In this document: piece after piece, positions 8,083-29,868 of the stretch | How positions within the stretch are numbered: position 1 is the first letter of the stretch | Layout of the letters: each line of letters begins with the position of its first letter | DNA from: Hemiscyllium ocellatum | Taxonomy: Eukaryota | Length of the DNA stretch: 64,000 nucleotides | Reading direction: 5' to 3' | Assembly: GCF_020745735.1 (NCBI RefSeq) | Contig: NC_083407.1 | Span: 70,671,857-70,735,856 of the forward strand | The notes under the pieces: generated by a model | The model's database searches: none | What the model was told of the DNA's origin: nothing | Seen by the model: only the letters and a program-made list of their open reading frames with translations | Translations under genes and position numbers: made by a program

Positions 8083-8175
8083 CTGTAGGAAGATTATAAT
8101 TTGTCTCACTTATGCATTCATGATGAAAAGATACTCTTCGGAATAATTTTTAAGCACTACATGAAAGCTACCTAC

Positions 8176-10649: not shown

Positions 10650-10928
10650 CTTTCAAGCTGACATCACAACTGCAGGAGCAGCTTCCCACATCATTAGTTA
10701 CAGTGCATTTATATTCACCAACAAATGAAGGACCAATCTTCAACATATGAAGACTAATTAGATAGTTCTCAGTGACCATCTTATATTTTTCACTAGATCG
10801 AATCTGTTTATTGTCCTTGTACCACATAACTTTAAAGGGAGCAGAACCGGCCACTTCACATTCAAGGGTGACACCACTGTTTCTTACTACCTCAGCAGAT
10901 TGAAGTTTCCGCCTAAAACTGGGAGGCT
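10650..10928 (-). CDS. ttn: titin I-band Ig exon F8
   Basis: 279 bp; EPPSFRRKLQSAEVVRN; donor GTTAGT. Confidence 0.9.
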
Positions 10929-11044
10929 CTATAAAGTAATCACAATAAAGTCCAAATCAACCAAAGCATAGAAATAATAGAAGCTTTAATCAAGAAAATT
11001 AAAGTATGTATTATGCTGCCAAATTACAAAGACAATTTACAGAC

Positions 11045-11326
11045 CTTTAACTTCAACCTCAGTGCTGCTGCTGTCACTACCAGCTTCATTCCTCGCTTCA
11101 CAGATGTAGCATGTACTGTCCTCCAAACTAACATTAATAATTTCAAGAACTGCCACAGAGCCATCAAATGACATTGTACATTTATCACTGGCTATAAGTT
11201 CATGACCACCTTTGTACCAAGTAACTTTGATTTTTGGTGTGCCAGTTATAATGCACTCAAAGCGTGCTGTGTCTCCTTTCTTTATTATTGTTGATGGATT
11301 TAGCTTTTTAATGAAGCTTGGAGGTT
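11045..11326 (-). CDS. ttn: titin I-band Ig exon A8 (not in ORF track)
   Basis: 282 bp; near-copy of A6, EPPSFIKKLNPSTIIKKG..DSTCYICEARNEAG; donor GTCTGT. Confidence 0.88.
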
Positions 11327-11994
11327 CTAGAAATCAAAATGTTATAAGTGTCAGCATAAATCTAAAAGGATAACTAAAAGCAATTCAAACTAACAGTCAA
11401 ATATAAATAATGATCAATAATGCATTTACAATCAAAATTTGCCAACTTAATGAAACTGGTTCATACTCAATTGCAGCTCTGTTAATGGTAAAGAAAACAA
11501 TTTCCTTTTTCATATGCTATCAGCATTTTTTTAATTGTCTCTGTTATAATGGCTATTTTTCATTCTTTGGAATTGGATATCACTAGACTATGCAAGTTCT
11601 CAAAATCGTCACTTTTATCATTTTATCACATAAATCAATTTGAATTGAGTTTATTTTTTTGCCGGTCTTCAAGCTGAGAATACATTCTCCACCACTCCAC
11701 ATACATCACCTAACAGTGACTATCAGAACATAGTCTACTCCAAACTATAGAGTTTCAAAAGAGGGAATACTAAGTCTGACTCGCAGTCCAGATTTACTAT
11801 GCTGTAAAACTAATGCTGGATAATTGGTATTGCTCCCTGTCCATGACTGGCAATGTAAATCCTACCACCACAGCTGATCAATTTCTAAAAAAATAAGTCA
11901 AAAGTGCTGAACTTTTCAACTAGCTAGGATCGCAAAGCAATCTTACGTGAAGTAGAGTTGTAAAAACTGTAAAACAATATACAAAAATGCACAC

Positions 11995-12273
11995 CTTTCA
12001 CAAACAATTCTGCAGAACAGGCAACTGTCCCGACATCGTTGCTGACTTGGCAGGTGTAACTGCCTGCATCAGATATTTTAGCTGAGACCAACTCTAGCAA
12101 GTATGTTGAGCCTTCATTCCAAATAGAATATGCCACACCATGCATCAATTCCCTGTCCCCTTTGAGCCATTTTGTAGATAACGGTGTGGTTCCTTTCACA
12201 ACACTCCTAAACTGTACAGTAGAACCAAGTACAACATCCCGCGATGTTACTTTTTCGACAAAGCTTGGAGGCT
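11995..12273 (-). CDS. ttn: titin I-band Ig exon B7
   Basis: 279 bp; EPPSFVEKVTSRDVVLG; donor GTGTGC. Confidence 0.9.
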
Positions 12274-12529
12274 CTAAAATTCACACAGGAAAAAAACACA
12301 TTTAATTAACTCATGTACAGAGAAACTATAAGACATGATGAGGTTGAAGAGAATGTTGTAGAGGAATGCTAATATGATCTTCAAAATCAATGAATTAACA
12401 AATCAAAGATAATGGTGTTTGATGAGTACGTTTAGTTACTTCACTAGTGTCGTGAAGAGAAAGAAACTGCTTGGGTAAAGAAATTAATATTCACACTGAG
12501 AAGAAAATATAACAAGATAATGTTCAAAC

Positions 12530-12817
12530 CTTTTACACTTAAGAAAGCACTGCATTCGTCCATTCCTGCTGAATTTGCAGCTCTACAAGAGTAAATTCCA
12601 CCATCTGAAACGTCTAACTCAAAGACCTCCAAAGACAGCATGTTGTCTTGAGATAACATCTTGTATTTGATACTGGCTGATATTTCATTGCCATCTTTAT
12701 ACCAAGAAATGTCCATTGGAATTGAACCAGAAACTTTACAATCCATTCGCACAAAAGCTCCTAAAGTACTGCTCATTTCCTTTAATTTTCTCGTAAACAA
12801 TGGAGCAATTATTTGTT
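12530..12817 (-). CDS. ttn: titin I-band Ig exon C7
   Basis: 288 bp; EQIIAPLFTRKLKEMSS; donor GTTTGA. Confidence 0.9.
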
Positions 12818-12937
12818 CTGTCCAGTGCAAGAGTAAAACAAAAGTCAATAAAAATATGCCCACTATTTTCAAGTTTCTGACAATTTTAATGTTTTTTTCA
12901 AGAAAATTAAAGCCATCAACACAAATTAATCACTGAC

Positions 12938-13216
12938 CTAACACTGTCAAAGAAATACTGCAGCTGTCAGCTCCAAACTCATTCTGGACTTCGAAAGTAT
13001 AGTCAGCACTGTCATCCATTTCCACAGACTGAATTTTTAGACTTGCCACTTGATGTGCAAAACTTGTTTTAAATTTTCTATCTGATTCCAGTTTCTTTCC
13101 ATTTTTGAACCATGCAACACTTAGTTCTGGTGTACCGGCTACAGTACACTCCAAAATTGCTGGTTCTCCTGCAGTCACCGTGAGTGGCTCAGACTTATCT
13201 TTGATATTCGCAGGTT
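12938..13216 (-). CDS. ttn: titin I-band Ig exon D7
   Basis: 279 bp; EPANIKDKSEPLTVTAG; donor GTCAGT. Confidence 0.9.
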
Positions 13217-13309
13217 CTGTGGGAATAAGTAGATATCTGCATGAGGAGAACTATGCAATAAATTTGCTACTTGCCGTCATTTCATATGGATAGAGCTGGC
13301 TGTAGATCT

Positions 13310-13420
13310 TTTTTGTATCAACACATTCAGATGTATTATGACAAATTTCTGGAGCAGGTGGTTTTGGGTTTGGGTTGGGGTCTTCTGGCTCAGAGGTAGG
13401 TGTACTACCACTGTGTCACA
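13310..13420 (-). mobile_element. short SINE-like repeat (tRNA-like head), minus copy
   Basis: Reverse complement gtgacacagtggtagtacacctacctctgagccagaagacc..cacctgctccagaa aligns with the plus copy at 13577-13685. Confidence 0.5.
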
Positions 13421-13576
13421 ATAGCGCTGCCAGCATTAGGTCTGATTACTCATTAGCTTGGTGTCAAATTTAATGAATACTGCTGCAGTAAAAATGTCAG
13501 TCTGCTTGATTGCTGTATGAGTTCCATTTGAAGGTAGTTCGGAGTGCCCTAAATCAACTCAGAGTAGGAGACTCTT

Positions 13577-13685
13577 GTGGTGCAATGGTAGTGTCCCTAC
13601 TGTGGACCAGGAGACCCGGATGCAAGGCCAGCCTGCTGCAGCGGTGTATAATAATATCTCTGAACAGCTTGATTAGGAAAAACTA
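13577..13685 (+). mobile_element. short SINE-like repeat (tRNA-like head), plus copy
   Basis: gtggtgcaatggtagtgtccctac (A-box-like)..gcctgctgcag..atctctgaacagcttgattag. Confidence 0.5.
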
Positions 13686-14019
13686 GATTAAAAAATCTTC
13701 ATGTTTGCTTTCATGTCTCAAATTATGTTAAAAATCATGCTTCAAGAGCTCATAAAACACGAGGTACTGGCAGTGAGCAGAAATCAAATGAAAAGAGTGC
13801 TTCTACAAATTTGTTAGAGGAATTTATTTGATCTTGAGTAGAGAAACTATTGTGTTGCAGACAAGGCTGTTGGATATGGAAAATGTCCCCATTGCCAATT
13901 ATAACAGTCCTCATTTTGGTGATCACAAAACATTAAAGTTATTCTACTTGGGAAGGTAAATACTATGAAACTGAAATCAATGACTTTCAGACAATATGCA
14001 TTTATTACTTGCTACTAAC

Positions 14020-14298
14020 CCAATATGGCCAATGTAGCAAAGCATTTTGCAGTTCCTGCGTCATTCTTTGCCTGACAAATGTACTGTCCACTGTGACTTT
14101 CTTCAACCTTAATAATCTGTAATGTGGCAACATTGTTTTCAAAGGACATTTTTATATTTTCATCTTCTTTGATATGTTTGCCATCTTTTTTCCAGCTTGT
14201 CGTTATTGGAACTGAGCCCTTTACAAGACATTGAAATTCAGCAGAATTTCCAGAAAATACTGTTGCATTTTCTATTGTTTGTACGAAGGTTGGTCTCT
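14020..14298 (-). CDS. ttn: titin I-band Ig exon E7 (not in ORF track)
   Basis: 279 bp, read by hand: ERPTFVQTIENATVFSGNSAEFQC..HSGQYICQAKNDAGTAKCFATLAIL; donor GTTAGT. Confidence 0.88.
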
Positions 14299-14579
14299 CT
14301 AGTTTAAAGCAAAGAGAATATATAACCTGTTATAGTTTATAATGACACAACCCAACACTTCATTTAACAAGCACTGTGATTCACGAGCTGCGCCAGCACA
14401 CGCCGCGGCCGGCTGAACGGACCAGGAATTGGCTCGGCAGCGTCACAGACGCGTGCACGTGGTGGAGAGTTCGCGAGGAGCCGGGGTGACAGGGACTACC
14501 AAACAGGAACATGACAACAAAGCACAGAGCACACAACATCCAGGGTAAAAGCACTAAGGAGAACTGGATTGTGACTGAC

Positions 14580-14858
14580 CTTTCAAACTGACTGTAGAAC
14601 TGCAGGAGCAACTCCCAACATCATTTTTGACTGTACACTTGTATTCACCAACATCAGAACTATCAGATTTTAGAATGCAAAGACTGGCTAAAGAAATGTC
14701 AGTGATTATTTTGTACTTTTTACTGTGTCGAATTTGTTTATTGTCTTTATACCACATAACTTCAAAAGGACTTGAACCGGCCACCTCACATTCAAGAGTG
14801 ACATCAGTAGATTTTACTACCTCAACTGGTTCAAGCTTCTTCGTAAATGTGGGAGGTT
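14580..14858 (-). CDS. ttn: titin I-band Ig exon F7
   Basis: 279 bp; EPPTFTKKLEPVEVVKS; donor GTCAGT. Confidence 0.9.
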
Positions 14859-15389
14859 CTAAAGAGCAAAGATGACAGCATAGTTTATAAATCTCGCATT
14901 TAGCAAGTTGAGTCCCAATATTACCAACCATATTAAAAAACTATAATGGTTAATGACGTGAGACAAATTAATAGCCAGACACGTTTAACTTCAGTTATTA
15001 TTGAAGGCAAATAGTTCGAATATTTTAAGAAACACACTTTATGCTTATTTTGTACATATACTCAAATTTCAATGCCATTAGTGATCCTCGCATTTTATAA
15101 TTTTGCCCAGATGTACATAATTAGCAAATAAAATTCTCTGATCAACAAAGAAGAAAAAATATAAAGAGAAGTTAAAATAGTGCATTTTATTTCCCGCTGT
15201 CACTTTATTATCATTTGATTTGAGACGGAGAAGTGTCCTTTCGACCACAATAGGACCTACACTGATAATTGAAGATTAGGTCCTACTATATGTATGTTAT
15301 CCAAAGGAGTTCTGATTTTCAATTTGAGCATAATACTGAATGCTCATGTAAAATGGATAGAAAGGTAGCAAAGTCTTTGAAATAAACTA

Positions 15390-15727
15390 AACTAGGAATG
15401 ATACAGAGGTTTTGGAGAGGGTGCAAAGAAGGTTTACCAAGATGCTGGCTGGACTGGAGGGCTTGCCTTATGAAGAAAGGTTGAATAAGCTCGGACGATT
15501 CTCTCTGGAGAGAAGGAGGAAGAGAGGAGACCTGATCGAGGTGTATAAAATAATGAGAGGAATAGATAGAATCAATCACCAGAGACTTTTCCCCAGGGCA
15601 GGATTGACTGGCACGAGAAGTCATAGTTTGAAGTTATTAGGAGGAAAGTATAAAGGAGACGTTAGAGGTAGGTTCTTTACGCAGAGAGTTGTGAATGCAT
15701 GGAATGCGTTGCCAGCTGTGGTGGTGG
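15390..15727 (+). mobile_element. CR1-type LINE ORF2 C-terminal fragment
   Basis: ORF 15412..15744 ERVQRRFTKMLAGLEGLPYEERLNKLGRFSLERRRKRGDLIEVYKIMRG..FFTQRVVNAWNALP. Confidence 0.85.
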
Positions 15728-15899
15728 TTGCTTCCAGCATGTGAGTAGTTTCCAATCCACAATCAAAAAGAAGCCATAAAATGAGACCACTTAAGCCAAG
15801 GTGCCCAAATATTCCACAATTATGCAAGAAGGATTTGCAACACTTTCAGAAAGACCAAGTTACTTCCGATGGAAAATGTAACTAGGAATTTTTACAGAC

Positions 15900-16181
15900 C
15901 TTTAACTGTAACTTTAATCTCGCAAGATTCACCGCCAGCTTCATTTTGTGCTTTGCAAGAGTAATTCCCACTGTCATCCAGGCTTACATCGACAATTGCC
16001 AAGATTGCCATAGAATCAACGAATGACATTCTGTATTTTTGACTGGCACTAATCTCCCGATAATCCCTGAACCAAGAGACTTTTATTTCAGGTGTGCCAG
16101 TTACTTTGCACTCAAAAACTGCTGTCTCTCCTTTCTTAAAAATTGCTGCAGGCTCTAACTTCTTAATAAAATATGGAGGTT
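15900..16181 (-). CDS. ttn: titin I-band Ig exon A7
   Basis: 282 bp; EPPYFIKKLEPAAIFKKG; donor GTCTGT. Confidence 0.9.
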
Positions 16182-16460
16182 CTAGAGAAGAAAATGTAGT
16201 AAACTTCATTACAAATGTTAAATGCAGGAACAAACAAATACAACATAAAATGGAACAATGAAACACCTATGACTATAAGAAGGAATAAAAGAAGACAACA
16301 CATAACACACTAGTAACATTAAAAACAACAAACTAGAGAAAAAAATGGTAACACATCAGAAAAAAGTAACTTTGCAAAGTAGTATGATTTGCAAACTGGG
16401 AAAAGACAGAAGATTTCAATACTTTTGCACAATAGTTCATAATGAACTGAAAATACACAC

Positions 16461-16739
16461 CTTTGACAAATAGTCTTGCTGTACAAGTGGCAGTGCCAAC
16501 CTTGTTGCTGACTTCACATGTGTAGTCACCCAAATCAGAGACTTTAGCTGAAAGCAGCTCAAGTAAACTTGTTGAACCTTCACTTAAAATGAAACAGTCT
16601 GCGCCAGACATCAGCTCCCTGCCGTCCTTCAGCCATTTTATAGACAGTGGACCAGTTCCTTTCACAACACTTCTAAACTGCACTGTGGATCCAGGCAGAG
16701 CTTCCTGAGCTACAGGCTTTTCCACAAAACTTGGTGGCT
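16461..16739 (-). CDS. ttn: titin I-band Ig exon B6
   Basis: 279 bp; EPPSFVEKPVAQEALPG; donor GTGTGT. Confidence 0.9.
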
Positions 16740-16869
16740 CTGTAATTCATGTGAGGAAAAAGAATCCCTTTAGTACTCCTATTGCTGGGAAAACAAGTGA
16801 ACATCAGAAAAAGCTATAAATGCAAAAGCTGTGAAACAAACTGAAATAAAGGAAGTTCATATTTCAAAC

Positions 16870-17157
16870 CTGTTACTTTTAAGATACCACTGCATTCATC
16901 ACTTCCTGCTGAATTGGTTGCTTTACAAATGTAGGTTCCATGATCAGAAAAATCTAGTTCATTAACTTCAAGCGTCGTTGCATTATCTTGACATAATATT
17001 TTGTGTTTTTCATCAGATGTTATTACTGTGAAATCTTTATACCATGTAAAACTCATTGGAAGAGAACCAGAAGCTTTGCACTCCATATGGACGAAAGATC
17101 CCAAAACAGCATCCAATTCCCGTAATTTTCTTGTAAATATTGGGGGTATAATTTGAT
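16870..17157 (-). CDS. ttn: titin I-band Ig exon C6
   Basis: 288 bp; DQIIPPIFTRKLRELDA; donor GTTTGA. Confidence 0.9.
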
Positions 17158-17493
17158 CTGTCCAAGACAAAGGCAGCCACTCAATAACAAATATTTGGAA
17201 GTGGTTGAAATGAATAGGAACAACTCTGATTGTTTACATTAAGAGAGAATGACTTAAATGATGGAATTTTCAGATTGATTGGGAATACGTCCTCCATGAT
17301 CACTCAAATCAAATCTAACTTTCAAGCTGTCAACATGGCTATTCTACTTAGTTCCATGATGACTGGATCTCAACAAGTAAAAGTATCACAATAAAACACT
17401 TTAAATATGTCTAAGATCAACAGTTTTGCATGCTATGTTTTTCAATGCCACTGGATATTTAAACTAATATTTTAAATGCAAGGAAAAACTAAC

Positions 17494-17772
17494 CTAATAC
17501 AGTCAATGTTACTTTGCAGATGCTGGTTCCAAATTCATTCTTAACCTCAAATGTATACTCAGCCGTATCCTCATTAGAAACAGAGGGAATCTTTAGGCTG
17601 ATCACGTTATTCTCAAAGCTGAGTTTGTGTGTCCTGCTTGGTACCATTTCATTGCCATCCTTAAAACATTTAACTCTTAATTCTGGGGTACCAGTTACAG
17701 TACATTCCAAGTTTGCTGGATTTCCTGCGGTCACACTGAGCGGCTGTGCCGGTTCTATGATTTTTGCTGGTT
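17494..17772 (-). CDS. ttn: titin I-band Ig exon D6 (core Trp replaced by Cys)
   Basis: 279 bp; EPAKIIEPAQPLSVTAG..LRVKCFKDG; donor GTTAGT. Confidence 0.88.
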
Positions 17773-17902
17773 CTATGGAGGAAAAAAAATCCATTCAATA
17801 TCTTACAGCTATGAATCTCATTTCAGTTGGTGCACAACAAAGAATCTGAATCAGCTTGCAAAAATTTGAAGTGGAGGGTTGTGAAGTTAATGTCCCACCA
17901 AC

Positions 17903-18181
17903 CTGCTACCAGCAATGTGGCATAACACTTGTCAGTTCCTGCATCATTCTTGATATGACATGTATATTTCCCAGCATGATTTTCTCCAACAGTATTTATT
18001 TGAAGAGTAGCGACATTATTCTCAAAAGACAGTGAGATATTACCATCTTCTTTGATATAATCTTTGTCTTTCATCCAAGTTACATAAATGGGCTTTGAGC
18101 CTTTGACTAGACATTGGAATGCAACAGAATTTCCTGACAATGTTGTTACATTTTCAATCTTCTTCACAAATCCTGGGGGTT
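17903..18181 (-). CDS. ttn: titin I-band Ig exon E6
   Basis: 279 bp; EPPGFVKKIENVTTLSG; donor GTTGGT. Confidence 0.9.
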
Positions 18182-18359
18182 CTAGTGTAAAGTAAATGGT
18201 AATGTAAATAATTATTAGTTGTCCTAATTATGTTTTAATGCAATTTGGAAAGCTTCTTCAGGTATCTAAGCAATTAATTTTGCAGTGGAGAATAAAACAA
18301 TAAAGTTGGCACTATTAACAATGGAAGACAAATATTTTTGACAATGTATTTCAACTGAC

Positions 18360-18638
18360 CTTTCAAACTGACTGTGGAACTGCAGGAACAACCCCCCACA
18401 TCATTTTTGACTGTGCATGTGTATTCGCCAACGTCAGGGGTATCAAATGTTAGAATGCAGAGACTGGCTAAATAATTGTCAGAGATCATTTTGTATTTTT
18501 TGCTGCTCCGAATTTGTTTATTGTCCTTATACCACACAACTTCAAATGGAGCAGTACCGGTCACCTCACATTCCAGTGTGATATCATTGGTTTTAACTGT
18601 TTCAGCAGATTGAAGTTTCCGCTTAAAACTGGGAGGTT
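18360..18638 (-). CDS. ttn: titin I-band Ig exon F6 (probable chimeric junction exon)
   Basis: 279 bp; EPPSFKRKLQSAETVKT; donor GTCAGT. Confidence 0.9.
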
Positions 18639-18756
18639 CTATAAAGTAATCACAATAAAGTCCAAACTCAACAAAAGCACTGAAAATAAGAGTAGCTTTG
18701 CTCAAGAAAATTAAAATATGTATTATGCTACCAAATTACAAAGACAATTTACAGAC

Positions 18757-19038
18757 CTTTAACTTCAACCTCAGTGCTGCTGCTGTCACTACCAGCTTCA
18801 TTCCTCGCTTCACAGATGTAGTTTGTACTGTCCTCCAAACTAACACTAATAATCTCAAGAACTGCCACAGAACCATCAAACGACATCATACATTTGTCAC
18901 TGGCTATAAGTTCATGACCACCTTTGTACCAAGTAACTTTGATTTTTGGTGTGCCAGTTATAATGCATTCAAAACGTGCTGTATCTCCTTTCTTTATTAT
19001 CGTTGATGGATTCAGCTTTTTAATGAAGCTAGGAGGTT
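18757..19038 (-). CDS. ttn: titin I-band Ig exon A6 (not in ORF track)
   Basis: 282 bp, translated by hand, no stop: EPPSFIKKLNPSTIIKKG..DSTNYICEARNEAGSDSSSTEVEVK; donor GTCTGT. Confidence 0.88.
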
Positions 19039-19689
19039 CTAGAAGTCAAAATGTTAGAAATGTCAGTATAAATTTAAAGGATAGCCAACAGCTATTCAAA
19101 CTCACAATAAAATATAAGTAATTATCAATAATGCATTTACAGTCAAAATTTGCCACCTTAATAAATCTGATCCATACTCAACTGTGGCTTTATTAATAGT
19201 AAAGAAAACATAATCTCTTTTTCACATGATCTCAGTATTTCTTATTGCTACCTCTGTTATAATAACTATTATTTAGGGTTGGGGCAGACTAAACTATGAA
19301 AGTTCTTAAAGTTGTCCCCTTTACTATTTATCACACAAATCAATTTGAATTGAGAGGTTTTATTTCAGGACTTTGAACTGAGAACAAATTCTCCACCACT
19401 CCACAACACTTCACCTAACAGTGACTATCTGAATACAGTCCACTTTTGAGTAAAATGTAGAGTTTCAAAATAGGGACTATTAAGTCTGATTCTCAGCCCA
19501 GATTTACTGTGCTGTATAATTGGTATTGCTCCTTGTCCATGACGGGCAATGTAAATCCTACCACTACAGCTGATCAATTGCTAAGAAAATAAATCAGTTG
19601 TGCTGAACCTTTCATCTAGCTAGACTTGCAAAGCAATCTTATGTGAAATAGAGTTGTAAAACTGTAAAATAATATACAAAAATGCACAC

Positions 19690-20494: not shown

Positions 20495-20622
20495 CTGTCC
20501 AGGGCAAGGGAGAAAAGATATCAATTCAAAAATTAATTATTTTAAAATTTGTGACAATATTTGTTATGTTTTAAATATTGCTTTAAGCAAATTAAAGCCA
20601 TCAACACAAATTAATCACTGAC

Positions 20623-20901
20623 CTAACACTGTCAAAGAAATACTGCAGCTGTCAGCTCCAAATTCATTCTGGACGTTGAAAGTATAGTCAGCACTGTCAT
20701 CCTTTTCAACAGACCGAATTTTTAGACTTGCCACTTTATTTGCAAAACTCATTTTATATTTTCCAACTGACTCCAGTTTCTCTCCATTTTTGAACCACGC
20801 AACACTTAATTCTGGTGTACCAGCTACAGTACACTCCAAAATTGCTGGATTTCCTGAAGTCACTGTGAATTGCTCAGTTTTTTCTATGATTTTTGCAGGT
20901 T
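20623..20901 (-). CDS. ttn: titin I-band Ig exon D5
   Basis: 279 bp; EPAKIIEKTEQFTVTSG; donor GTCAGT. Confidence 0.9.
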
Positions 20902-21390
20902 CTGTGGGAATAATGAGATCAGTTACATCAGGAGAACTGTATAATTTTGATTATTATTTTATCATTTATTTTGTAGTGCAAGCTTGATGCCTCAGAATTT
21001 GGTTCAATTCTAGTCACAACTTCTATAACAAACATTTCTACCATCAACTTTCCATAATGCTCCATGTGCAATAACTTGTGACAGTCTCAATTCAGCTCAC
21101 AAAGAGTTGGTGTTCATATTGTAAAACCTGAGCATTATGTAAGCAATCTCATTCAGAAATGCCATAAAATGGATGGTGATAGAAAGTGAAAGACCTCACG
21201 TGGATAGAGTGGAAACCTCATCTGACAATTTATCAGAGATGTATTTTAAAACACAATTGAGAAATTGTATCCTGCAGTAAACAGAGTCATTCTTGCAATT
21301 ACTAACAATGACTGCTCCACATGGAAAATGATCTATCACTGGAGCTTAAAAGAATGTGGGCAGACTTTCATAGAAAACCATAAAATTCAA

Positions 21391-22033
21391 ACTGGACCAG
21401 ACAGGGTAAATGCAGGAAATATGTTCCCAATGACCAGGCAGTCCAGAACCATGGGCTCACAGTCTGACAATATAAGAATGGACATTTAGTACTGAGACAG
21501 GGAGAAATGTCCTCACTGAGAGTGGTGAGCCCATTGAATTATTTGCAACAGAAAGTAGTTGAGGCCAAAGCATTCAATGTTTTCAAGAAGGAGTTAGAAT
21601 AGAATAGAATCCTTACAGTGTGGAAGCAGTCCATTTGGCCCATCGAGTCCACACCGACCATCTGAAGATCCAGCCCCATCCTATGGTTAATCCACCTAGC
21701 CTGCACACGATGGGCTATTTAGCATTGCCAATCCACCTAATCTGCACATCTTTGGACTGTGAGAGGAAATCCACACAGACACAGGAAGAATGTGCAGACT
21801 GCACACTGACAGTTGCTTGAGATTGGAATTGAACCCAGGTCTCTGGGGCTGTGAGGCAGTAGTGCTAACTGTTGAGTCACTGTTGTTCTTATGACTGAAG
21901 GGGTCAAAGGGTGTGGGGTAAAGTAGGAACATCGTAGTAAATTGGATGATCAGCCATGATTACACTGAATGGCAGAACAGGCTTGAAGGGCTGAATGGCT
22001 GACTTCTGCTCCTATTTTCTATGTTTCTATGTT
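21391..22033 (+). mobile_element. CR1/L2 LINE 3' end interrupted by a SINE
   Basis: gaaagtagttgaggccaaag..ttcaagaaggagttag, resumes after the SINE with ggatgatcagccatgat..cctattttctatgtttctatg tail. Confidence 0.7.
21601..21885 (-). mobile_element. HE1-type elasmobranch SINE
   Basis: Reverse complement has a tRNA-like head (cagttagcactactgcctcacagc..gggttcaattcc), central gtccaaagatgtgcag..ggcaatgctaaat, 3' ccacactgtaagg and (ATTCT)n tail. Confidence 0.8.
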
Positions 22034-22177
22034 TATATCCCCTTAACAGTTTTAAATTTCCTAATTTTGATGATCATAGAATTAATTTTTTAAAAATGAA
22101 AACTACATTATGTGAAAACGTAAATGTCATGGAATTCTGACTTTTGGACAATGTTGTGCTTATTATTTGGTACTAAC

Positions 22178-22456
22178 CCATTACAACCAATGCAGCCGCG
22201 CATTTTGCAGTTCCTGCATCATTCTTTGCCTGACAAACGTAATTTCCACTGTGATTTTCTTCAACGTTAATAATCTGTAATGTGACAACATTATCTTCAA
22301 AGGACATTTTTACGTTATCATCTTCTTTGATATTTTTGCCATCTTTTTTCCAGCTTGTCGTTATTGGAACTGAGCCTTTTACAAGACATTGAAACACAGC
22401 AGAATTTCCAGAAAATACTGTTGCATTTTCTATCGTTTGTATGAAGGTTGGTCTCT
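22178..22456 (-). CDS. ttn: titin I-band Ig exon E5
   Basis: 279 bp; ERPTFIQTIENATVFSG; donor GTTAGT. Confidence 0.9.
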
Positions 22457-22632
22457 CTAGTTTAAAGCAAAGAGAATATATAACCTGTTATAGTTTATAT
22501 TACATAGTCACTGTTTAAATTTTTAAAATATTGTGATTTGAGATGTTGATTAATAACATACAGGAATATAATAATGAAGAGATACTACACAACATCCAGG
22601 TAAGTACTTGGGAGAACTGGATTATAACTGAC

Positions 22633-22911
22633 CTTTCAAACTGACTGTAGAACTGCAGGAGCAACTCCCAACATCATTTTTGACCGTACATGTGTATTCG
22701 CCAATGTCTGAGCTATCGGATGTTAGAATGCAAAGACTGACTAAAGAAATATCTGAGATCATTTTGTACTTCTTACTGCGTCGTATTTGTTTATTGTCTT
22801 TATACCACATAACTTCAAAGGGACCTGAACCGGCCACCTCACATTCAAGAGTGACATCAGTAGATTTTACGACCTCAACTGGCTCAAGCTTCTTTGTAAA
22901 TGTGGGAGGTT
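22633..22911 (-). CDS. ttn: titin I-band Ig exon F5
   Basis: 279 bp; EPPTFTKKLEPVEVVKS; donor GTCAGT. Confidence 0.9.
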
Positions 22912-23056
22912 CTAAAGAATAAACACATAACTTGGTTAATAGGTCATTGCCTCAAACGTTTGTGACGCTGAACAATACTCACTGATATTAGAAATGTTCA
23001 AGTGATCTTCATTTCAATTTTTGATTATAACTTCAGAGAGACAAACCAACACAGAA

Positions 23057-24375
23057 ATAGTCATAGACTTGTACAGCACTGAAAAAAAACCCTTCATTCC
23101 AACTCATCCATGCTGACCAGATATCCAAATTAATCTAGTCCCATTTGCCAGCATTTTGCCCACGTCCCTCTAAATCCTTCCAATCATGTACTCATCCAGA
23201 TGCTTTTTAAATGTTGTGATTGTACCTGCCTCAAATGCTTCCTCTGGTAGCTCATTCCATACAAACGCCACCCTCTGCCTGAAAAGGTTGCCCCTTAGAT
23301 CCCTTTCAAATCTTTCCCATCTCACCTTAAACCTATGACCTCTAGTTTTTGGACTCCCTTACACTGGGAAAAAGACCTTGTCTTTTTACCCTATCATGCC
23401 CCTCATGATTTCATAAACCTCTATGAGGTTATCCCTCAGCCTTCAACGCTCCAGAGAAAACAGCCACAGCCTATTCAGCCTCTCCCTAGCGATTAAACCC
23501 TCCAACCACAGCAACATCCTTGGAAATCTTTCTGAACCCTTTCAAGTTTAACATCTTTCCTCGAGCAGTATGCCGAAAGTGGCCTAACCAATGTCCTGTA
23601 CAGCCACAACATGACCTCCCAACTCCTGTACTCAACGCACTGACCAACAAAGGATAAGGTCGACTCCATGCGAGCTCCTGCGTGCAAATCTAAGTTCCCT
23701 ATTTCTTACAATCATGACCTATTATTTACTTACCTTTGCTATTTAACTATGTGATCTGCTTGTATTGCTCGCAAAACAAAGCTTTTCACTGTACCTTGGT
23801 ATATGTGATAATAAATTAATTCAATTCAGTTCAATTCAAAGGCAACTGTACCAAACGCCTTCTTCACTACCCTGTCTACTGCGATTCCACTTTCAAGGAA
23901 ATATGAATCTGTGCCACAAGGTAACACTCTCCAGGACACGACCATTACGTGTATTTGTCCTGCTCTGATTTGGCTTACCAAAATGCAATACTACACATTT
24001 ATATAAATTAACCTCCATCTGCCACGCCTTGGTCCATCGCCCCATTTGATCAAGGTCCTGTTGCACTCTGAGATAACCTTATTCACTGTCCACTACATCT
24101 CCAATTTTGGTGTCACCTGCGAACTTACTAACCATCTCTCCTATATTCACATCCAAATCAATTATATAAATGACAAAAAGCAGTGGATGCCAGCACCGAT
24201 CCATACAGCACGCCACTGATCACAGGCCTCTAATTTGAAAATTAACCTCCAACACTACCCTCTGTCTCCTATCTTCAAGCCAATTTTGTATCCAAATGGC
24301 GAGCTCGCCCTGGATTCCATGTGATCTGTCCTTGTTATTCAATTTGCTATGCTGAACCTTGTTGAACGACTTGCT
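23057..24375 (-). mobile_element. CR1-type LINE 3' ~1.1 kb (HER1-like), degraded, with nested insertion
   Basis: Tail ctatgactat at 23057; RT C-terminal remnants (EYRSWEVMLWLYRTLVRP, IQNWLEDRRQRVV) in ORFs 23493..23687 and 24220..24402. Confidence 0.8.
23654..23837 (+). mobile_element. 5'-truncated retroposon 3' end nested in the CR1, (ATTCA)n-like tail, candidate TSD aaagg
   Basis: caaaacaaagcttttcactgtaccttggtatatgtgataataaatt plus tail; aaagg at 23649-23653 and 23838-23842. Confidence 0.55.
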
Positions 24376-24950
24376 ATTATGTGGATACGACAGAAAACTC
24401 AATAAATTTACGCCATATGTATTTTTACTTTATTACAACCTTTTAGGGTACCATCAGTCCTCAACCACTATCCAGATATACATGAGGCTAATATATCAAA
24501 AAAAAACTTGGAAGGGATAATTTAACAATTCCCCATCACGTTGCAGGGAGGACTTTCATTAAATGCTTTATTCCTGATGTTTGCCCATCTCAATACCATT
24601 GAACCCAGCAATGGGTCAGCCATCCATTGAATCTCAGCAAGAACTGTATATCAATAAATGTATATCAATGTATTGCCTGAGGTATAGTGCAACTGAGGAG
24701 CTGCATTTAAATCACATCCAACAGCTACATTTCCTGAAGTTTCCAGTGAAAATGTCTGCAAGGTTTGCATCTGCCAGCTTTCCAAGTGGAATTAATTTTT
24801 ATTCCACAAACAAAAGCAAGCCACAAGCTAGACCTTGTAAGTGATGGTTTGCAGAAGGATTTTATAATTACACAAAAAGATCTTGCAACAAAAGATCTCA
24901 GAAAGGTCAATCAACAACTAATAGAGAAGTAACTAGAAATATTCACAGAC

Positions 24951-25232
24951 CTTTAACTGTAACCTTCATCTCGCACGATTCACTGCCAGCTTCATTCTGT
25001 GCTTTACAAGAATAATTGCCACTGTCTTCGAGGCTTATATTAGCAATTTCAAGGTTTGCCACGGAATCAACAAATGACATTCTGTATTTCTGGTTGGCAC
25101 TAATCTCCCGATAATTCTTGAACCAAGAAATTTTGATTTCAGGTGTTCCAGTTACTTTGCACTCAAAATTTGCTGTCTCTCCCTTTTTAAATACTGTGGC
25201 AGGAGCTAACTTCTTAATAAAGTATGGAGGTT
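24951..25232 (-). CDS. ttn: titin I-band Ig exon A5
   Basis: 282 bp; EPPYFIKKLAPATVFKKG; donor GTCTGT. Confidence 0.9.
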
Positions 25233-26463
25233 CTGGAGAATAAAACAAAGTAAACTTCATTACAAATAGGAGAAAAAAATACACCACCATAGTGGGCCCG
25301 GCTGCTACTGAAAAGGCAGTGGAGACCTCACTGCACACTCTTCTCACTCTTCCCCCTGATCTGCTTTGGTGCTGCTCAGATACTCGGATGCTTGTAGTTG
25401 GAGTCCTGATCATCCTTAGAAGGAATTTCTGACCCGCAAGAGCTGTCAACCAATCAGCGGATGGCTGTTCATCAGTACTGGCCAATCCACTGGGAGCAGT
25501 GGCCTCTGCTCGTGCTGTGGGAGGCCAAGGCAGAGGATGATGGATAGAGTTCCAGGGACAAGGTAGAATTAGAATTAGGTTTACTGTCATGTGTATTCAA
25601 GCACAGAGGTACAGGAGTACCATGAAAATTGCCATCATTCCTGGCACCATCTTAGGTACAAAGATACCTGAGTATAAAATCTTAGGTACAAAATAGAAAA
25701 GTAAAGAAATAAGTTAAAAGTTTGATGTTATGTGCAGAAGGTTCACTGTGGCCTCTCTGTCTCAATTAAGCTGAGACAGTTGTTATTATCTAGCCTAGAC
25801 ATGAGTCTTATTTTTGGCGAGACCTTTGAAGGATAGTATCTTTCTTGGGACACCCTCACCCTGACCCCAGACTCTCAACAAACCAAAGGATACCTTTCGG
25901 GATTTACAGTCTAAGATTATTACATTTTATGGTATCTGCCTGTTGCTGGTTGTACACCATTGGTGGCAGATTGGGGCCCTTTGGTCAATTAAGGGCCTCA
26001 ATTGGTTTGCAAGCAGAAATGTTGTTCTCTGGCCTTTTCACCCAAGGTAATTATGATAAGAAGCACAGCCAACTGCATCTCCAGCACTTTCCTGATCAGT
26101 CAAACAGGCATTTCAACCTCCCAGACAGCTGCTGAGCTGTTTGTGGGGGGATCAAATTCTTTCCAAGGTTACACAATCAAGATATAAAAAGGCAAAGACA
26201 GACAAGCCAAAGCAAAATAGTTCTAGAGAAGAAAATGGGGTAAATGTTGTTATATGTATGAAATGCTGGAACAAACACATAGAACACAGAAAGGAGCAAT
26301 GAAACACCCAGTAATATGAAGGAATGAAAGAAAACAACACATTACTGACATGAAAAATAACCAGAGAAAAATAGCTTTGCAAACTTGTAAAGTTTTCAAA
26401 CTTAAGACAGAATCTTGCAAGAGTGCTTAATAATGATTTAACAAATGAACTAAAAATACACAC

Positions 26464-26742
26464 CTTTGACAAATAGTCTTGCTGTACAAGTGGCAGTGCC
26501 AACCTTGTTGCTGACTTCACATGTGTAGTCACCCAAATCAGAATTTTTAGTTGAAAACAGCTCAAGTAAACTTGTTGAACCTTCACTTAAAATGGAACAG
26601 TCAGCACCAGACATCAGCTCCCTGCCGTCCTTCAGCCATTTTATAGACAGTGGAGCAGTTCCTTTCACAACACTTCTAAACTGCACTGTGGATCCAGGCA
26701 AAGCTTCCTGAGCTATAGGCTTTTCCACAAAACTTGGTGGCT
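26464..26742 (-). CDS. ttn: titin I-band Ig exon B4
   Basis: 279 bp; EPPSFVEKPIAQEALPG; donor GTGTGT. Confidence 0.9.
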
Positions 26743-27514
26743 CTATAATTCACGTGAGGAAAGAGAACAATACAATTGGAACGCTAATAAAAATAAAATG
26801 GCAGATTCTAATTTTCCATGAACTGCAAAACAAATTTTAACTACTTGTTTTGGGCTGGATCTTCTCCCTTGGGCAGAAAAAAAAGTCATGACTGTTTCCA
26901 GGTTCCAAACCCTCCCCCTTTCTAAGGACACAATCACTCACTGGGATATTCACTGGGACTTCACCATAACTGGCCTAGAGAAAGTCAGGACAGTGGGCAG
27001 GCTCTGGAGGTGGACAGGCCATTCACGGGTGTTCCAGCTTCAACAGAGGTAGCCAACTCCATCAGATAGCAAGTAATTGAAGTACACTGCAGCCTGAGGG
27101 CACATTATTACCAGTTGTGCTTAAATGTTTCAATGAAAGGCAATACAGCTGCCAGATGACCATAATAGGAGAGGTGGGGCAGACATTTCTCTGCCGAGGA
27201 ACTTTTGGTTGTGTCATTGGAACATTGGGAGGGCCTCCAGATTTGCCTAGAACCTCTGGCTTGCTGCTGGATGCCAGTTTCTAAGTAGTTAAGCCCAATT
27301 AAAATCAAAAGCCCAGCTATTCCCCTTTGAGTATGCTTAGCAAGGTTATTAACAACTCTTACGGAGTACCGTCTTCACAGGGCCTGTCTCAAATTTGTCA
27401 AAATGGCCAGCATCATAAACAGGACCAGGAAACTGGCCTTCCACATAGGCACTCAGATCCCATTCATTTTCAACCAAAGAAAAGCCCAAGAATTCCGTCC
27501 TTTTATTTTGTTTA

Positions 27515-27850
27515 TTCTTTTGAGGGATATGGACACCTCTTATTCTGCCAGTATTGGTTTCCCATCCCTAAATGGCATTGAACTAGGTAGCCCATTTCTG
27601 AAGGAAGTTAGGAATCTACCACATTGCTGTGGGTCTGGAATCTCATGTAGACCAGACCAGGTAACAATGGCAAATTTCCTGCTCTAAAGGCCTTAGTCAA
27701 CCAAATGGATTTTTGTAACAATAAATGAGAGTTATCATGTTCGTCACAAAGGCTAGTTTTATGATTCCAGATTGCATTAATTGAACTTGAATGAATTCCC
27801 AGAGCATTAGCCTAGACCACTGGATTATTAATACAATAACAGTACCACCC
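27515..27850 (-). mobile_element. degraded shark SINE (possibly Deu-domain/SacSINE-like)
   Basis: cacattgctgtgggtctggaatctcatgtagaccagaccaggtaa..taaaggccttagtcaaccaaatgg resembles recalled shark SINE consensus. Confidence 0.5.
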
Positions 27851-27943
27851 TTATAGGGCATCATGCAAACCTTTGAAATTTAATTAATGGTGATGCAGAA
27901 GCTATAAAAGAAACTTTAAATAAAATAAGTTTATCTTTCACAC

Positions 27944-28231
27944 CTGTTATTTTTAGAATACCACTGCATTCAGTACTTCCTGCTGAATTGGTTGCTTTGC
28001 AAATGTAGTTTCCGTGATCAGAAAACTCTAGTTTATTAACTTCCAAAGTTGCTGCATTATCTTGAGATAATATGTTGTATTTTGCATCAGATGTTATTAC
28101 TTTGAAATCTTTATACCAAGTAAAACTCATTGGAAGTGAACCAGAAGCTTTGCATTCCATTTGTGCAAAAGATCCCAAAACAGCATCAATTTTCCGTAAC
28201 TTTTTAGTAAATGTTGGAGGTATTTGTTGAT
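27944..28231 (-). CDS. ttn: titin I-band Ig exon C4
   Basis: 288 bp; DQQIPPTFTKKLRKIDA; donor GTGTGA. Confidence 0.9.
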
Positions 28232-28725
28232 CTGTTCAAGATAAAGTGATGAATAAACAACTAGTCAACTTACAAAAACTATTTCTAAATGAATAAAATC
28301 CATTGTTCATAAGATGCGTTGGCTTAAACAGAAAAGGTTCAGATTTAATGGGAAATACACTCCCTAAGACATTCAAGATAAAACTATTTTTAAACATTGC
28401 TGAAAAGGAATTAAAGTTTTCATTTTGCTCTCACTGGATAAGTGCAAAATGATGAGCTTTAATTGTATTTAGTTTTAGCAATGTTTATATCTTCTGTGCA
28501 ACTAGGTCAACTATTCTCATGTTTCAGAAAAAAAGGAGCTATAAAGCCTATTTTAAAAGTCTCAACATGGATTTGCCTACTCTCATTAAGACTGGAAAAG
28601 TTATAATAATAAGATCCTTCATATACATTTATGGTTGTGACCAGGATTCCTTACTTTGTGAGCAAAGTTTTCAAATGACACGGACGATTTATATAAGTGA
28701 ATTCTAAATGCAAATAAACACTAAC

Positions 28726-29004
28726 CTAATACAGTCAATGTTGCTTTGCAGATGCTGGTTCCAAATTCATTCTTAACCTCAAATGTATACTCAGCCGTAT
28801 CCTCATTAGAAACAGAGGGAATCTTTAGGCTGATCACGTTATTCTCAAAGCTGAGTTTGTGTCTCCTGCTTGGTACCATTTCATTGCCATCCTGAAAACA
28901 TTTAACTCTTAATTCTGGGGTACCAGTTACAGTACATTCCAGGTTTGCTGGATTTCCTGCGGTCACGCTGAGCGACTGTGCTTGTTCTATGATTTTTGCT
29001 GGTT
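28726..29004 (-). CDS. ttn: titin I-band Ig exon D4 (core Trp replaced by Cys)
   Basis: 279 bp; EPAKIIEQAQSLSVTAG..LRVKCFQDG; donor GTTAGT. Confidence 0.88.
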
Positions 29005-29144
29005 CTATGGAGGAAAAAGAAATCCATTCAATATCTACAGCTATGAATCTCATTTCAGTTGGTGCATCACAAAAAATTTGAATTGACGTGTAATTGGCAA
29101 TGATCTTGAAGCGGATGGTACTATTGAGTTAATGTCCCACTGAC

Positions 29145-29423
29145 CTGCTACCAACAATGTAGCAGAACACTTCTCAGTTCCTGCCTCATTCTTGATATGA
29201 CATGTATATTTCCCAGCATGATTTTCTCCAACAGTATTTATTTGAAGAGTAGCAATATTATTCTCAAAAGACAATGAGATATTACCATCTTCTTTGACAT
29301 CAACTTTGTCTTTCATCCAAGTTACATAAATAGGCTTTGAGCCTTTGACTAGACTTTGGAATACAACAGAATTCCCTGACAACGTTGTTACACTTTCAAT
29401 CTTCTTTACAAATCCTGGGGGTT
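29145..29423 (-). CDS. ttn: titin I-band Ig exon E4
   Basis: 279 bp; EPPGFVKKIESVTTLSG; donor GTCAGT. Confidence 0.9.
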
Positions 29424-29589
29424 CTAGTTTAAAACAAATGGTGACATGAATATATTTCACAGCTTTTAGTTGTCATCTTAAAAATGCTTCAATATAAAAG
29501 ATCTTTTCACTAAAGAGTTGAGCATTGCATTCTGCAATAAATAATTGATGTGCTGCTATAAAGAATTCTTACATTATGTCATAACTGAC

Positions 29590-29868
29590 CTTTCAAACTG
29601 ACTGTAGAACTGCAGGAGCTACTGCCAACATCATTTTTTATTGTACATGTATATTCACCAATGTCAGAGGTATCAGATTTTAGAATGGTAAGACTGGCTA
29701 AACCATTTTCAAAGATTATTTTGTATTTTTTGCCACGTCGAATTGGTTTATTATCCTTATACCATGTAACTTCAAAGGGAGCTGTACCAGTCACCTCACA
29801 TTCAAGAGTTACATCATCGTTTTTAACTACATCAACAGGTTCAAGTTTCTTTATAAATGTGGGAGGTT
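29590..29868 (-). CDS. ttn: titin I-band Ig exon F4
   Basis: 279 bp; EPPTFIKKLEPVDVVKN; donor GTCAGT. Confidence 0.9.

What the first reader, a model, noticed from the sequence alone, without database searches (positions are those of the whole stretch)
10900..29700. Lineage-recent tandem duplication of a 12-exon block
Exons pair one-to-one at a 12-exon offset: E4/E6, D4/D6, C4/C6, B4/B6, A5/A7, F5/F7, E5/E7, D5/D7, C5/C7, B5/B7, A6/A8. They share private features (ERPTF start in E5/E7, VKCF in D4/D6, WYKDF in C4/C6, DSSSTEV in A6/A8) and alignable intron DNA (e.g. 11327-11994 versus 19039-19689). The copies span ~18.6-29.7 kb and ~10.9-18.6 kb, the size difference being due to different TE insertions. 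Because every exon is phase 1/1, the duplication preserves both frame and super-repeat register. Divergence and different TE content argue against a collapsed or duplicated assembly artefact.
Basis: seen in the sequence. Interest (0 to 1): 0.72.

Follow-up and report, generated by a model that had tools for sequence, protein, structure and literature searches.

The report
Old twelve-exon titin repeat, kept alike
In the spring region of the giant muscle protein titin, this shark carries two side-by-side copies of a twelve-exon block; the doubling is real, but devil rays have it too, so it is probably ancient and the copies have been kept alike by later sequence exchange.

Summary
On the minus strand lie 58 one-domain Ig exons of titin's middle-Ig spring. 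They form eight 6-Ig super-repeats followed by the start of the 10-Ig super-repeat. Eleven exon pairs at a 12-exon offset (29145..18757 against 17903..11045) are 85-98% identical in DNA, against 57-75% for other same-type exons. About 2.1 kb of intron also aligns, at 81%. All 24 exons are intact and phase 1-1. Pooled dN/dS is 0.32. An assembly artefact is excluded.

"Lineage-recent" is not supported. Annotated titin-like fragments of two devil rays (Mobula) show the same exon order, with copies 12 exons apart. An elephant-shark fragment shows single copies, which fits published counts: six super-repeats in elephant shark, eight in whale shark. Ray copies of the A-type domains are as far apart (69-71%) as shark-ray orthologues (67-79%). 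Both shark A5/A7 copies resemble the ray's downstream copy.

Divergence between the shark copies is a mosaic: dS runs from 0.05 to 0.52, with heterogeneity p of about 1e-5 or lower. The twelfth exon (18360-18638) is itself mosaic, and about 400 bp between the copies has no partner.

Best reading: a two-super-repeat duplication older than the shark-ray split, later homogenised in patches by gene conversion. This adds a member to a known kind of event.

The parts
18595..29450 (-). Upstream copy in the transcript: exons x22-x32 (E4 D4 C4 B4 A5 F5 E5 D5 C5 B5 A6), their introns, and the first ~40 nt of x33. About 10.9 kb.
   Evidence: Colinear homology to 10,885-18,210. Boundaries.
10885..18210 (-). 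Downstream copy: exons x34-x44 (E6 D6 C6 B6 A7 F7 E7 D7 C7 B7 A8), their introns, and the first ~40 nt of x45. About 7.3 kb.
   Evidence: Over 5,218 aligned columns identity is 87.8% (exons 92.3%, introns 80.9%).
18211..18594 (-). Spacer between the copies: the 3' ~235 nt of exon x33 plus most of intron 18182-18359. No close partner in the window.
   Evidence: Windowed identity falls to 0.42-0.58 in the intron. BLAST with word size 7 finds nothing else in the window.
18360..18638 (-). Exon x33 (F6), a mosaic. Its first 30 nt are 93% identical to x45. The rest is 83-85% identical to x21/x27/x39 and 72% to x45.
   Evidence: Best split lies between exon nt 34 and 46; Fisher p 1e-3 to 2e-5; permutation p 0.008.
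10650..10928 (-). Exon x45 (F8). Only its 5' ~40 nt and the upstream intron belong to the high-identity block. It is the orthologue of Mobula F8 (76% aa).
29590..29868 (-). Exon x21 (F4), just outside the block. 81% identical to x33 and 84% to x27/x39.
29145..29423 (-). x22 (E4), pair of x34.
   Evidence: 93.5% nt, dS 0.14.
28726..29004 (-). x23 (D4, 'VKCF'), pair of x35.
   Evidence: 97.1% nt, dS 0.05. Contains a 119-nt identical run.
27944..28231 (-). x24 (C4, 'WYKDF'), pair of x36.
   Evidence: 86.8% nt, dS 0.31.
26464..26742 (-). x25 (B4), pair of x37.
   Evidence: 96.1% nt, dS 0.06.
24951..25232 (-). x26 (A5), pair of x38.
   Evidence: 85.5% nt, dS 0.52. 80% aa to Mobula A7 and 67% to Mobula A5.
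22633..22911 (-). x27 (F5), pair of x39.
   Evidence: 91.8% nt, dS 0.31.
22178..22456 (-). x28 (E5, 'ERPTF'), pair of x40.
   Evidence: 90.7% nt, dS 0.15.
20623..20901 (-). x29 (D5), pair of x41.
   Evidence: 89.2% nt, dS 0.18.
20207..20494 (-). x30 (C5), pair of x42.
   Evidence: 92.7% nt, dS 0.13.
19690..19968 (-). x31 (B5), pair of x43.
   Evidence: 98.2% nt, dS 0.05. The adjoining 100 nt of intron is 95% identical.
18757..19038 (-). x32 (A6, 'DSSSTEV'), pair of x44.
   Evidence: 94.7% nt, dS 0.21, dN/dS 0.10. Best PDB match is titin I65-I70, 3B43.
17903..18181 (-). x34 (E6).
17494..17772 (-). x35 (D6, 'VKCF').
16870..17157 (-). x36 (C6, 'WYKDF').
16461..16739 (-). x37 (B6).
15900..16181 (-). 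x38 (A7).
14580..14858 (-). x39 (F7).
14020..14298 (-). x40 (E7, 'ERPTF').
12938..13216 (-). x41 (D7).
12530..12817 (-). x42 (C7).
11995..12273 (-). x43 (B7).
11045..11326 (-). x44 (A8, 'DSSSTEV').
15454..15714 (+). LINE-like transposon ORF fragment in the downstream copy's A7-F7 intron.
   Evidence: 59% aa to the ORF at 3295-3702. tblastn map.
23185..23505 (-). Copy of the same transposon family in the matching A5-F5 intron of the upstream copy, in the opposite orientation. This indicates an independent insertion.
21373..21599 (+). Decayed fragment of the same transposon family, present only in the upstream copy's E5-D5 intron.

Best explanation
The region is the differentially spliced middle-Ig spring of titin. 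Each exon encodes one I-set Ig domain in phase 1-1. The domains follow a strict six-type order (A F E D C B).

A unit of two super-repeats (12 exons) was doubled in tandem on the elasmobranch stem. This happened after the split from chimaeras and before sharks and rays separated, and it took the count of 6-Ig super-repeats from six to eight.

Since then the two copies have exchanged sequence repeatedly. The mechanism would be intragenic gene conversion, or unequal exchange between the pre-existing copies. In this shark one large exchange seems to have reset almost the whole block, from the acceptor of E4/E6 to about 40 nt into F6/F8, leaving neutral divergence of about 0.2-0.3. Smaller, later tracts reset patches of 300-400 bp to 95-100% identity. 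The same process ran independently in rays, so paralogues group by species.

Both copies stay under purifying selection. When spliced in, they would add 12 folded Ig domains to the I-band spring. In elephant shark and mammals such exons are included in skeletal muscle and skipped in heart.

Shown here: the sequence relationships, the intact exons, the selection, the mosaic divergence, and the ray and chimaera comparisons.

Inferred: the order and mechanism of events, splicing, and the mechanical effect.
For: Identity of the gene:
- Every exon tested is an I-set domain.
- The best solved relative is titin I65-I70, 3B43, E 4.5e-89.
- The six types are monophyletic.

Doubling:
- 11 sister pairs at an offset of 12 exons.
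- Alignable introns.
- Pooled dS 0.176 and dN/dS 0.32.

Same layout in rays:
- Mobula hypostoma P0127 reads D5 C5 B5 A6. P0217 lies 2.26 kb downstream in the same titin gene and reads B6(part) A7 F7 E7 D7 C7 B7 A8 F8 E8.
- In M. birostris, P0218 reads C2..A4. P0160 lies 630 bp further on and reads E4(part) D4 C4 B4 A5.
- The elephant-shark fragment P0220 has single B and A domains that are sister to the shark+ray pairs, followed by F E8 D8 C8 B8.
- Hanashima 2025 (PMC12241362) counts six 6-Ig super-repeats in elephant shark and eight in whale shark. This window has eight.

Age:
- Mobula A5/A7 are 71% identical and A6/A8 69%. Single-copy shark-ray orthologues are 67-79%.
- Both shark A5 and A7 are 80% identical to Mobula A7 but 67-70% to Mobula A5.

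Exchange between copies:
- Paralogues of D, C and B cluster by species in both lineages.
- dS per exon ranges from 0.05 to 0.52; heterogeneity p = 6e-6.
- Intron windows are heterogeneous, p = 8.5e-9.
- The longest identical run is 119 nt, permutation p <= 0.0005.
- High-identity patches run into introns.
- Both ends of the block are sharp, and an unmatched spacer lies between the copies. This fits exchange between existing copies better than one new junction.
Against: - The AU test does not reject a tree in which the two Mobula A5/A7 copies are one clade (p = 0.09). A separate doubling in rays, with one fast-evolving copy, therefore stays possible.
- The ray evidence is protein only, pieced together from two congeneric species. 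Four exons are inferred in an unannotated 2.26-kb gap. No ray DNA could be fetched, so junctions and introns could not be compared.
- Conversion tracts of about 7 kb are unusually long.
- No shark other than this one was examined directly. The whale-shark count comes from a paper.
Confidence: 0.6

Rival explanations
1. A doubling of the 12-exon unit arose within the shark lineage after the split from rays. Rays doubled the same unit independently. Uneven divergence reflects uneven constraint plus a few later conversions.
For: - Shark copies are closer to each other than to any ray domain in all eight comparable domains.
- Paralogues cluster by species.
- Most introns still align at about 81%.
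- The AU test does not reject a Mobula-only A5/A7 clade (p = 0.09).
Against: - It needs two independent doublings of the same unit, in the same register, with the same downstream flank (F8, E8).
- Mobula A-type copies are as divergent as shark-ray orthologues. The ray event would therefore have to sit right at the split.
- It does not explain why both shark A5 and A7 match the ray's A7 better than its A5 (80% against 67-70%).
- A single new tandem junction should leave no unmatched 400-bp spacer.
- Synonymous and intron heterogeneity cannot be put down to constraint.
Confidence: 0.25
2. There was no elasmobranch doubling. Eight 6-Ig super-repeats are older than the chimaera split, and the elephant shark lost two. 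What is seen here is only long-tract conversion between two old neighbouring pairs of super-repeats.
For: - The block is bounded on both sides, with an unmatched spacer. That is the footprint of conversion rather than of a new junction.
- The elephant-shark B and A domains are sister to the shark+ray pairs. This is equally compatible with loss.
Against: [quoted passage not shown] A gain on the elasmobranch stem is therefore simpler.
- Conversion between blocks only ~65-70% identical, the background level, is mechanistically unlikely.
- Mobula A5/A7 and A6/A8 (69-71%) are clearly closer than unrelated super-repeats (47-62% aa).
Confidence: 0.1
3. Assembly artefact: two haplotypes or a mis-joined repeat placed in tandem.
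For: None beyond the general risk in repetitive genes. No read data were available.
Against: - The copies differ at 12% of aligned sites and in several kilobases of unalignable intron.
- They carry independent transposon insertions in opposite orientation.
- The synonymous-to-nonsynonymous pattern is that of long purifying selection.
- Independent ray assemblies show the same layout, and the published whale-shark count is also eight.
Confidence: 0.02

Closest known systems
6-Ig super-repeat expansion of the titin/connectin middle-Ig segment in cartilaginous fishes (Hanashima et al. 2025, PMC12241362)
   Same: Same gene region and same kind of event. That paper counts six 6-Ig super-repeats in elephant shark and eight in whale shark, against three in human and zebrafish. 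It attributes the growth to block duplications of one-exon Ig domains. This window also has eight.
   Different: The paper speaks of six-domain blocks. It reports no unit of 12 exons, no DNA-level comparison of the copies, no ray data and no homogenisation. Here the last step is a two-super-repeat unit, is shared with Mobula rays, and shows mosaic divergence.
Human TTN segmental duplication in the PEVK region (exons 172-180, 181-189, 190-198; PMC9142044)
   Same: A multi-exon block repeated in tandem inside titin's spring, frame-preserving and alternatively spliced. It is prone to copy-number change.
   Different: The human block encodes PEVK exons, not Ig domains. It consists of nine exons present three times. 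PMC12241362 dates it to 1-3 My ago, so its copies are very young. The block here is Ig, 12 exons, two copies, with 85-98% identical exons and a probable age above 250 My.
Rabbit titin I65-I70, the solved 6-Ig super-repeat fragment (PDB 3B43)
   Same: Best solved relative of the exons here: six matched stretches, E 4.5e-89. Same six-domain periodicity.
   Different: A mammalian protein fragment. It says nothing about the duplication itself.
Nebulin triplicate region (8 exons x 3; PMC9109913)
   Same: Another giant sarcomere gene with an in-frame multi-exon tandem segmental duplication.
   Different: A different gene and a different domain type. Compared from abstracts only, not analysed here.

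Membership tests
Titin (connectin) middle-Ig 6-Ig super-repeat region | One I-set Ig domain per exon, with symmetric phase 1-1. | tested here: met
   58 exons of 279/282/288 bp with AG/GT at phase 1. Pfam I-set E 1e-19 to 1e-23 for the six exons tested.
Titin (connectin) middle-Ig 6-Ig super-repeat region | Six-domain periodicity, with each position forming its own clade. | tested here: met
   The length pattern 282-279-279-279-288-279 repeats nine times. The six types are monophyletic, SH-aLRT 92-100.
Titin (connectin) middle-Ig 6-Ig super-repeat region | Closest relatives are titin middle-Ig domains of other vertebrates. | tested here: met
   PDB 3B43 titin I65-I70. One-to-one orthologues at 67-87% aa in 'titin-like' proteins of Mobula and Callorhinchus that lie inside 30,000-aa titin genes.
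Titin (connectin) middle-Ig 6-Ig super-repeat region | Position downstream of the Novex-3 and N2B exons. | not tested
   Long minus-strand open frames at 50365-54297, 59033-62560 and 62613-63998 were seen. Earlier notes call them N2B and Novex-3. I did not test this.
Simple tandem segmental duplication (one event, one junction) | Two adjacent, same-strand, colinear copies including introns. | tested here: met
Simple tandem segmental duplication (one event, one junction) | The copies abut at a single junction, with no unrelated sequence between them. | tested here: not met
   About 400 bp (18,211-18,594) between the copies has no close partner. Exon x33 is mosaic.
Simple tandem segmental duplication (one event, one junction) | Uniform neutral divergence along the copies. 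| tested here: not met
   Synonymous-site heterogeneity p = 6e-6. Intron-window heterogeneity p = 8.5e-9.
Concerted evolution by gene conversion between paralogous blocks | Paralogues group by species although the arrangement is shared between species. | tested here: met
   D, C and B pairs of shark and of Mobula each form species-specific pairs. The exon order is shared.
Concerted evolution by gene conversion between paralogous blocks | Mosaic of tracts with sharply different divergence, extending into non-coding DNA. | tested here: met
   Patches 17473-17850 and 11975-12374 are 95-100% identical, next to stretches at 60-80%. The 119-nt identical run has p <= 0.0005.
Concerted evolution by gene conversion between paralogous blocks | At least one paralogue pair that predates the species split, which excludes independent duplication. 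| tested here: inconclusive
   Mobula A5 falls outside the group (Mobula A7, shark A5, shark A7) with support 92/84. The alternative tree is not rejected, AU p = 0.09. The identities point the same way.

The most novel reading that the evidence does not exclude
Two 12-Ig blocks of titin's spring have evolved in concert for more than 250 million years, independently in sharks and in rays. Long and short conversion tracts inside a single gene keep renewing 85-100% identity between domains that sit 12 positions apart. The literature searched describes nothing of this kind for titin's Ig super-repeats. It would imply either selection for matched distant domain pairs or a standing recombination hotspot in the spring region.
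Probability: 0.45. Interest if true: 0.5.

Novelty: new member of a known kind. Interest (0 to 1): 0.38.

Why it matters
Titin's middle-Ig segment sets the length and stiffness of the muscle spring, and its domain count differs between vertebrate lineages. This locus shows how the last growth step in elasmobranchs happened: as a two-super-repeat unit of 12 exons.

The locus also shows that high identity between intragenic repeats is a poor clock. A block that looks recent is probably older than the shark-ray split and has been partly homogenised since.

For annotation, it warns that such exons are left out of main gene models. In the ray assemblies they sit in separate 'titin-like' or even 'peroxidasin homolog' models. 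Read mapping and variant calling in this block will be ambiguous in its 95-100% identical patches.

Tried and rejected
- **Simple crossover model.** I tested an unequal crossover between F8 (x45) and F4 (x21) inside the exon as the single origin. x33 is indeed a 5'-x45 / 3'-other mosaic. But its 3' part is no closer to x21 (83%) than to x27 or x39 (85%, 84%), and the following intron matches nothing. The model does not fit as it stands.
- **Third partial copy.** Self-BLAST suggested one at 28.7-30.2 kb. This is only background super-repeat similarity: x20/x32 are 69% identical.
- **Single-exon protein search.** It found no candidates. Short shark open frames are evidently not in that collection.
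- **Supplement of PMC12241362.** It holds primers but no Ig sequences, so whale-shark domains could not be compared.
- **Ray DNA.** It could not be fetched because the files are too large. No intron or synonymous-site comparison across species was possible.
- **AU test of the key A5/A7 topology.** Inconclusive, p = 0.09.
- **Pfam on the transposon ORFs.** No hits. The 'LINE-like' label rests on my recollection of the C-terminal motif.
- **Literature search for gene conversion in titin Ig repeats.** Nothing relevant. That is not proof of novelty.

Full report
**What is there**

The window carries a minus-strand gene made of one-domain Ig exons. I mapped 58 of them using open frames, AG/GT boundaries at phase 1 and Ig signatures. 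Lengths are 279, 282 or 288 bp. From x2 (43369-43650) to x55 (1504-1782) the length pattern 282-279-279-279-288-279 repeats nine times.

Pfam calls each tested exon an I-set domain. The best solved relative is the titin I65-I70 six-Ig fragment, 3B43, with six matched stretches and E 4.5e-89.

The ninth repeat (x50-x55) is the most divergent. It is the one with the closest tetrapod and teleost matches, and three further Ig exons follow it directly. I read it as the start of the conserved 10-Ig super-repeat. That leaves eight 6-Ig super-repeats (x2-x49).

**The observation**

Eleven exon pairs at an offset of 12 exons stand out. These are x22..x32 (29145..18757) against x34..x44 (17903..11045). 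They are 85-98% identical in DNA, while all other same-type pairs are 57-75%. Each pair is a supported sister pair. A6/A8, and the private motifs named are present.

Introns align as well. For example, 11327-11994 against 19039-19689 is 83.5% identical. Over 5,218 reliably aligned columns identity is 87.8%: exons 92.3%, introns 80.9%.

All 24 exons are open with canonical splice sites. Pooled dS is 0.176 and dN/dS is 0.32, so both copies have been kept as coding sequence.

The size difference (about 7.3 kb against 10.9 kb) lies in five introns:
- In one intron pair, both copies hold a fragment of the same LINE-like element but in opposite orientation (15454-15714 + against 23185-23505 -).
- In another, only the larger copy holds a fragment (21373-21599).
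- The rest is unalignable DNA that I could not classify.

An assembly artefact is not credible with this divergence.

**Anatomy of the ends**

Towards the 3' end of the transcript, high identity stops inside the F exon. The first 30 nt of x33 (18360-18638) are 93% identical to x45. The rest of x33 follows x21/x27/x39 (83-85%) and not x45 (72%). The best split lies between exon nt 34 and 46.

Towards the 5' end, identity stops about 30 nt upstream of the acceptor of x34/x22.

Between the two copies there remain about 400 bp: the 3' part of x33 plus intron 18182-18359. The intron matches nothing in the window, even at word size 7. A single new tandem junction leaves no such spacer. An unequal crossover between x45 and x21 would predict that x33's 3' part and its intron copy x21 and its intron, and they do not.

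**Mosaic divergence**

dS per exon pair runs from 0.05 (x23/x35, x31/x43, x25/x37) to 0.31-0.52 (x24/x36, x27/x39, x26/x38).
- Heterogeneity at synonymous sites has p = 6e-6.
- Heterogeneity among intron windows has p = 8.5e-9.
- The longest identical run (119 nt) beats 2,000 permutations.

Patches of 95-100% identity reach into introns, at 17473-17850 and 11975-12374. They sit next to stretches of 60-80% identity. Constraint cannot explain this at silent and intronic sites. Exchange between the copies can.

**Other species**

Hanashima et al. 2025 (PMC12241362) report six 6-Ig super-repeats in elephant shark, eight in whale shark and three in human and zebrafish. A full-library HMMER search and two word-indexed searches recovered annotated fragments from two devil rays and the elephant shark. 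I split these into domains and assigned them to my exons.

- **Mobula hypostoma.** P0127 reads D5 C5 B5 A6. P0217 lies 2.26 kb downstream on the same strand, inside the same 30,655-aa titin gene, and reads B6(part) A7 F7 E7 D7 C7 B7 A8 F8 E8. Given the strict domain order, the gap must hold F6 E6 D6 C6. The ray therefore has D-C-B-A twice, 12 exons apart.
- **M. birostris.** P0218 reads C2..A4. P0160 lies 630 bp on and reads E4(part) D4 C4 B4 A5. This is the upstream copy.
- **Elephant shark.** P0220 reads B A F E8 D8 C8 B8. Its B and A are sister to the shark+ray pairs.

Super-repeats outside the block show clean one-to-one shark-ray orthology at 67-79% aa.

Inside the block, paralogues group by species for D, C and B in both lineages. 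The ray's A-type copies are as far apart as orthologues: A5/A7 71% and A6/A8 69%. Both shark A5 and A7 are 80% identical to the ray's A7 but only 67-70% to its A5. In the tree the ray's A5 falls outside the other three (support 92/84). The AU test does not reject the alternative (p = 0.09).

**Reading**

The simplest account has three steps:
1. One doubling of a two-super-repeat unit before sharks and rays split. PMC12361510 dates that split to about 259 My. The doubling came after the chimaera split.
2. Exchange between the copies in each lineage. In this shark, one near-block-wide exchange left neutral divergence of about 0.2-0.3.
3. Later short tracts that reset patches to near identity.

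If dS of 0.5 corresponds to about the shark-ray split, the rate is about 1e-9 per site per year. The youngest patches would then be tens of millions of years old. This is a rough inference.

Independent doublings in sharks and rays remain possible (I give them 0.25), but they need two hits on the same unit and do not explain the A5/A7 asymmetry. The 66-87% identities to both ray and chimaera fit that.

**Function (inferred)**

Phase 1-1 exons let any subset be spliced in frame. In elephant shark and mammals the middle-Ig super-repeats are included in skeletal-muscle N2A titin and largely skipped in heart (PMC12241362). Twelve more Ig domains lengthen the folded-domain part of the spring.

The nearest near-identical domain is 12 positions away. 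This avoids the adjacency of similar domains that the same paper links to co-aggregation.

**Comparison and novelty**

Block duplication in titin's spring is well known. Examples are the 6- and 10-Ig super-repeats and the human 9-exon PEVK triplication (PMC9142044). The six-to-eight difference among cartilaginous fishes is already published as counts.

What is added here:
- the 12-exon unit;
- its presence in rays;
- the DNA-level mosaic;
- the case for long-term homogenisation.

I found no paper on gene conversion in titin Ig repeats. I rate this a new member of a known kind, of moderate interest.

Noticed in passing
window 29590-29868, 22633-22911, 18360-18638, 14580-14858: The F-type exons of super-repeats 4-7 share dS 0.3-0.6 in their 3' 222 nt. 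The background median is 1.16 for same-type exons of different super-repeats. No other domain type shows this closeness at a 6-exon offset, and it stops at the exon ends. It may be exon-limited conversion among F exons.
   Followed up: partly
window 28726-29004 and 17494-17772; P0160 residues 58-150: In D4/D6 the core tryptophan of the Ig fold is a cysteine ('VKCF'). The same change is present in the Mobula birostris orthologue. It is therefore an old, conserved oddity, not a private mark of the duplication.
   Followed up: partly
window 3295-3702(+), 15454-15714(+), 21373-21599(+), 23185-23505(-), 38267-38587(+): Five copies or fragments of one transposon family, recognised by a conserved ORF tail (..RGDLIEVYKI..FFTQRVV..WN.LP). 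There is no Pfam hit. From memory it resembles the C-terminal end of CR1/L2-type LINE ORF2.
   Followed up: partly
window 45132-45963(-): Proline-rich open frames with a weak GIY-YIG match (E 0.0012, below the Pfam cut-off). They sit beside a G-rich low-complexity run, inside the 5.5-kb intron between x1 and x2. Possibly the remains of a Penelope-like element.
   Followed up: no
window 47523-48158(-): One open frame holds two Ig domains without an intervening intron. It lies upstream of the super-repeats, where the three N-terminal middle-Ig domains are expected.
   Followed up: no
window 282-8457(-): Exons x50-x58 look like the start of the conserved 10-Ig super-repeat. They are the most divergent members of each type within the window. 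They are also the ones with the best matches (63-65% aa) to tetrapod and teleost titin fragments.
   Followed up: partly
Mobula assemblies GCA_963921235.1 and GCA_030028105.1 (no locus DNA held): In both ray annotations the middle-Ig super-repeat exons are left out of the 30,000-aa titin model. They are annotated as separate nested genes, one of them misnamed 'peroxidasin homolog' (P0160).
   Followed up: yes
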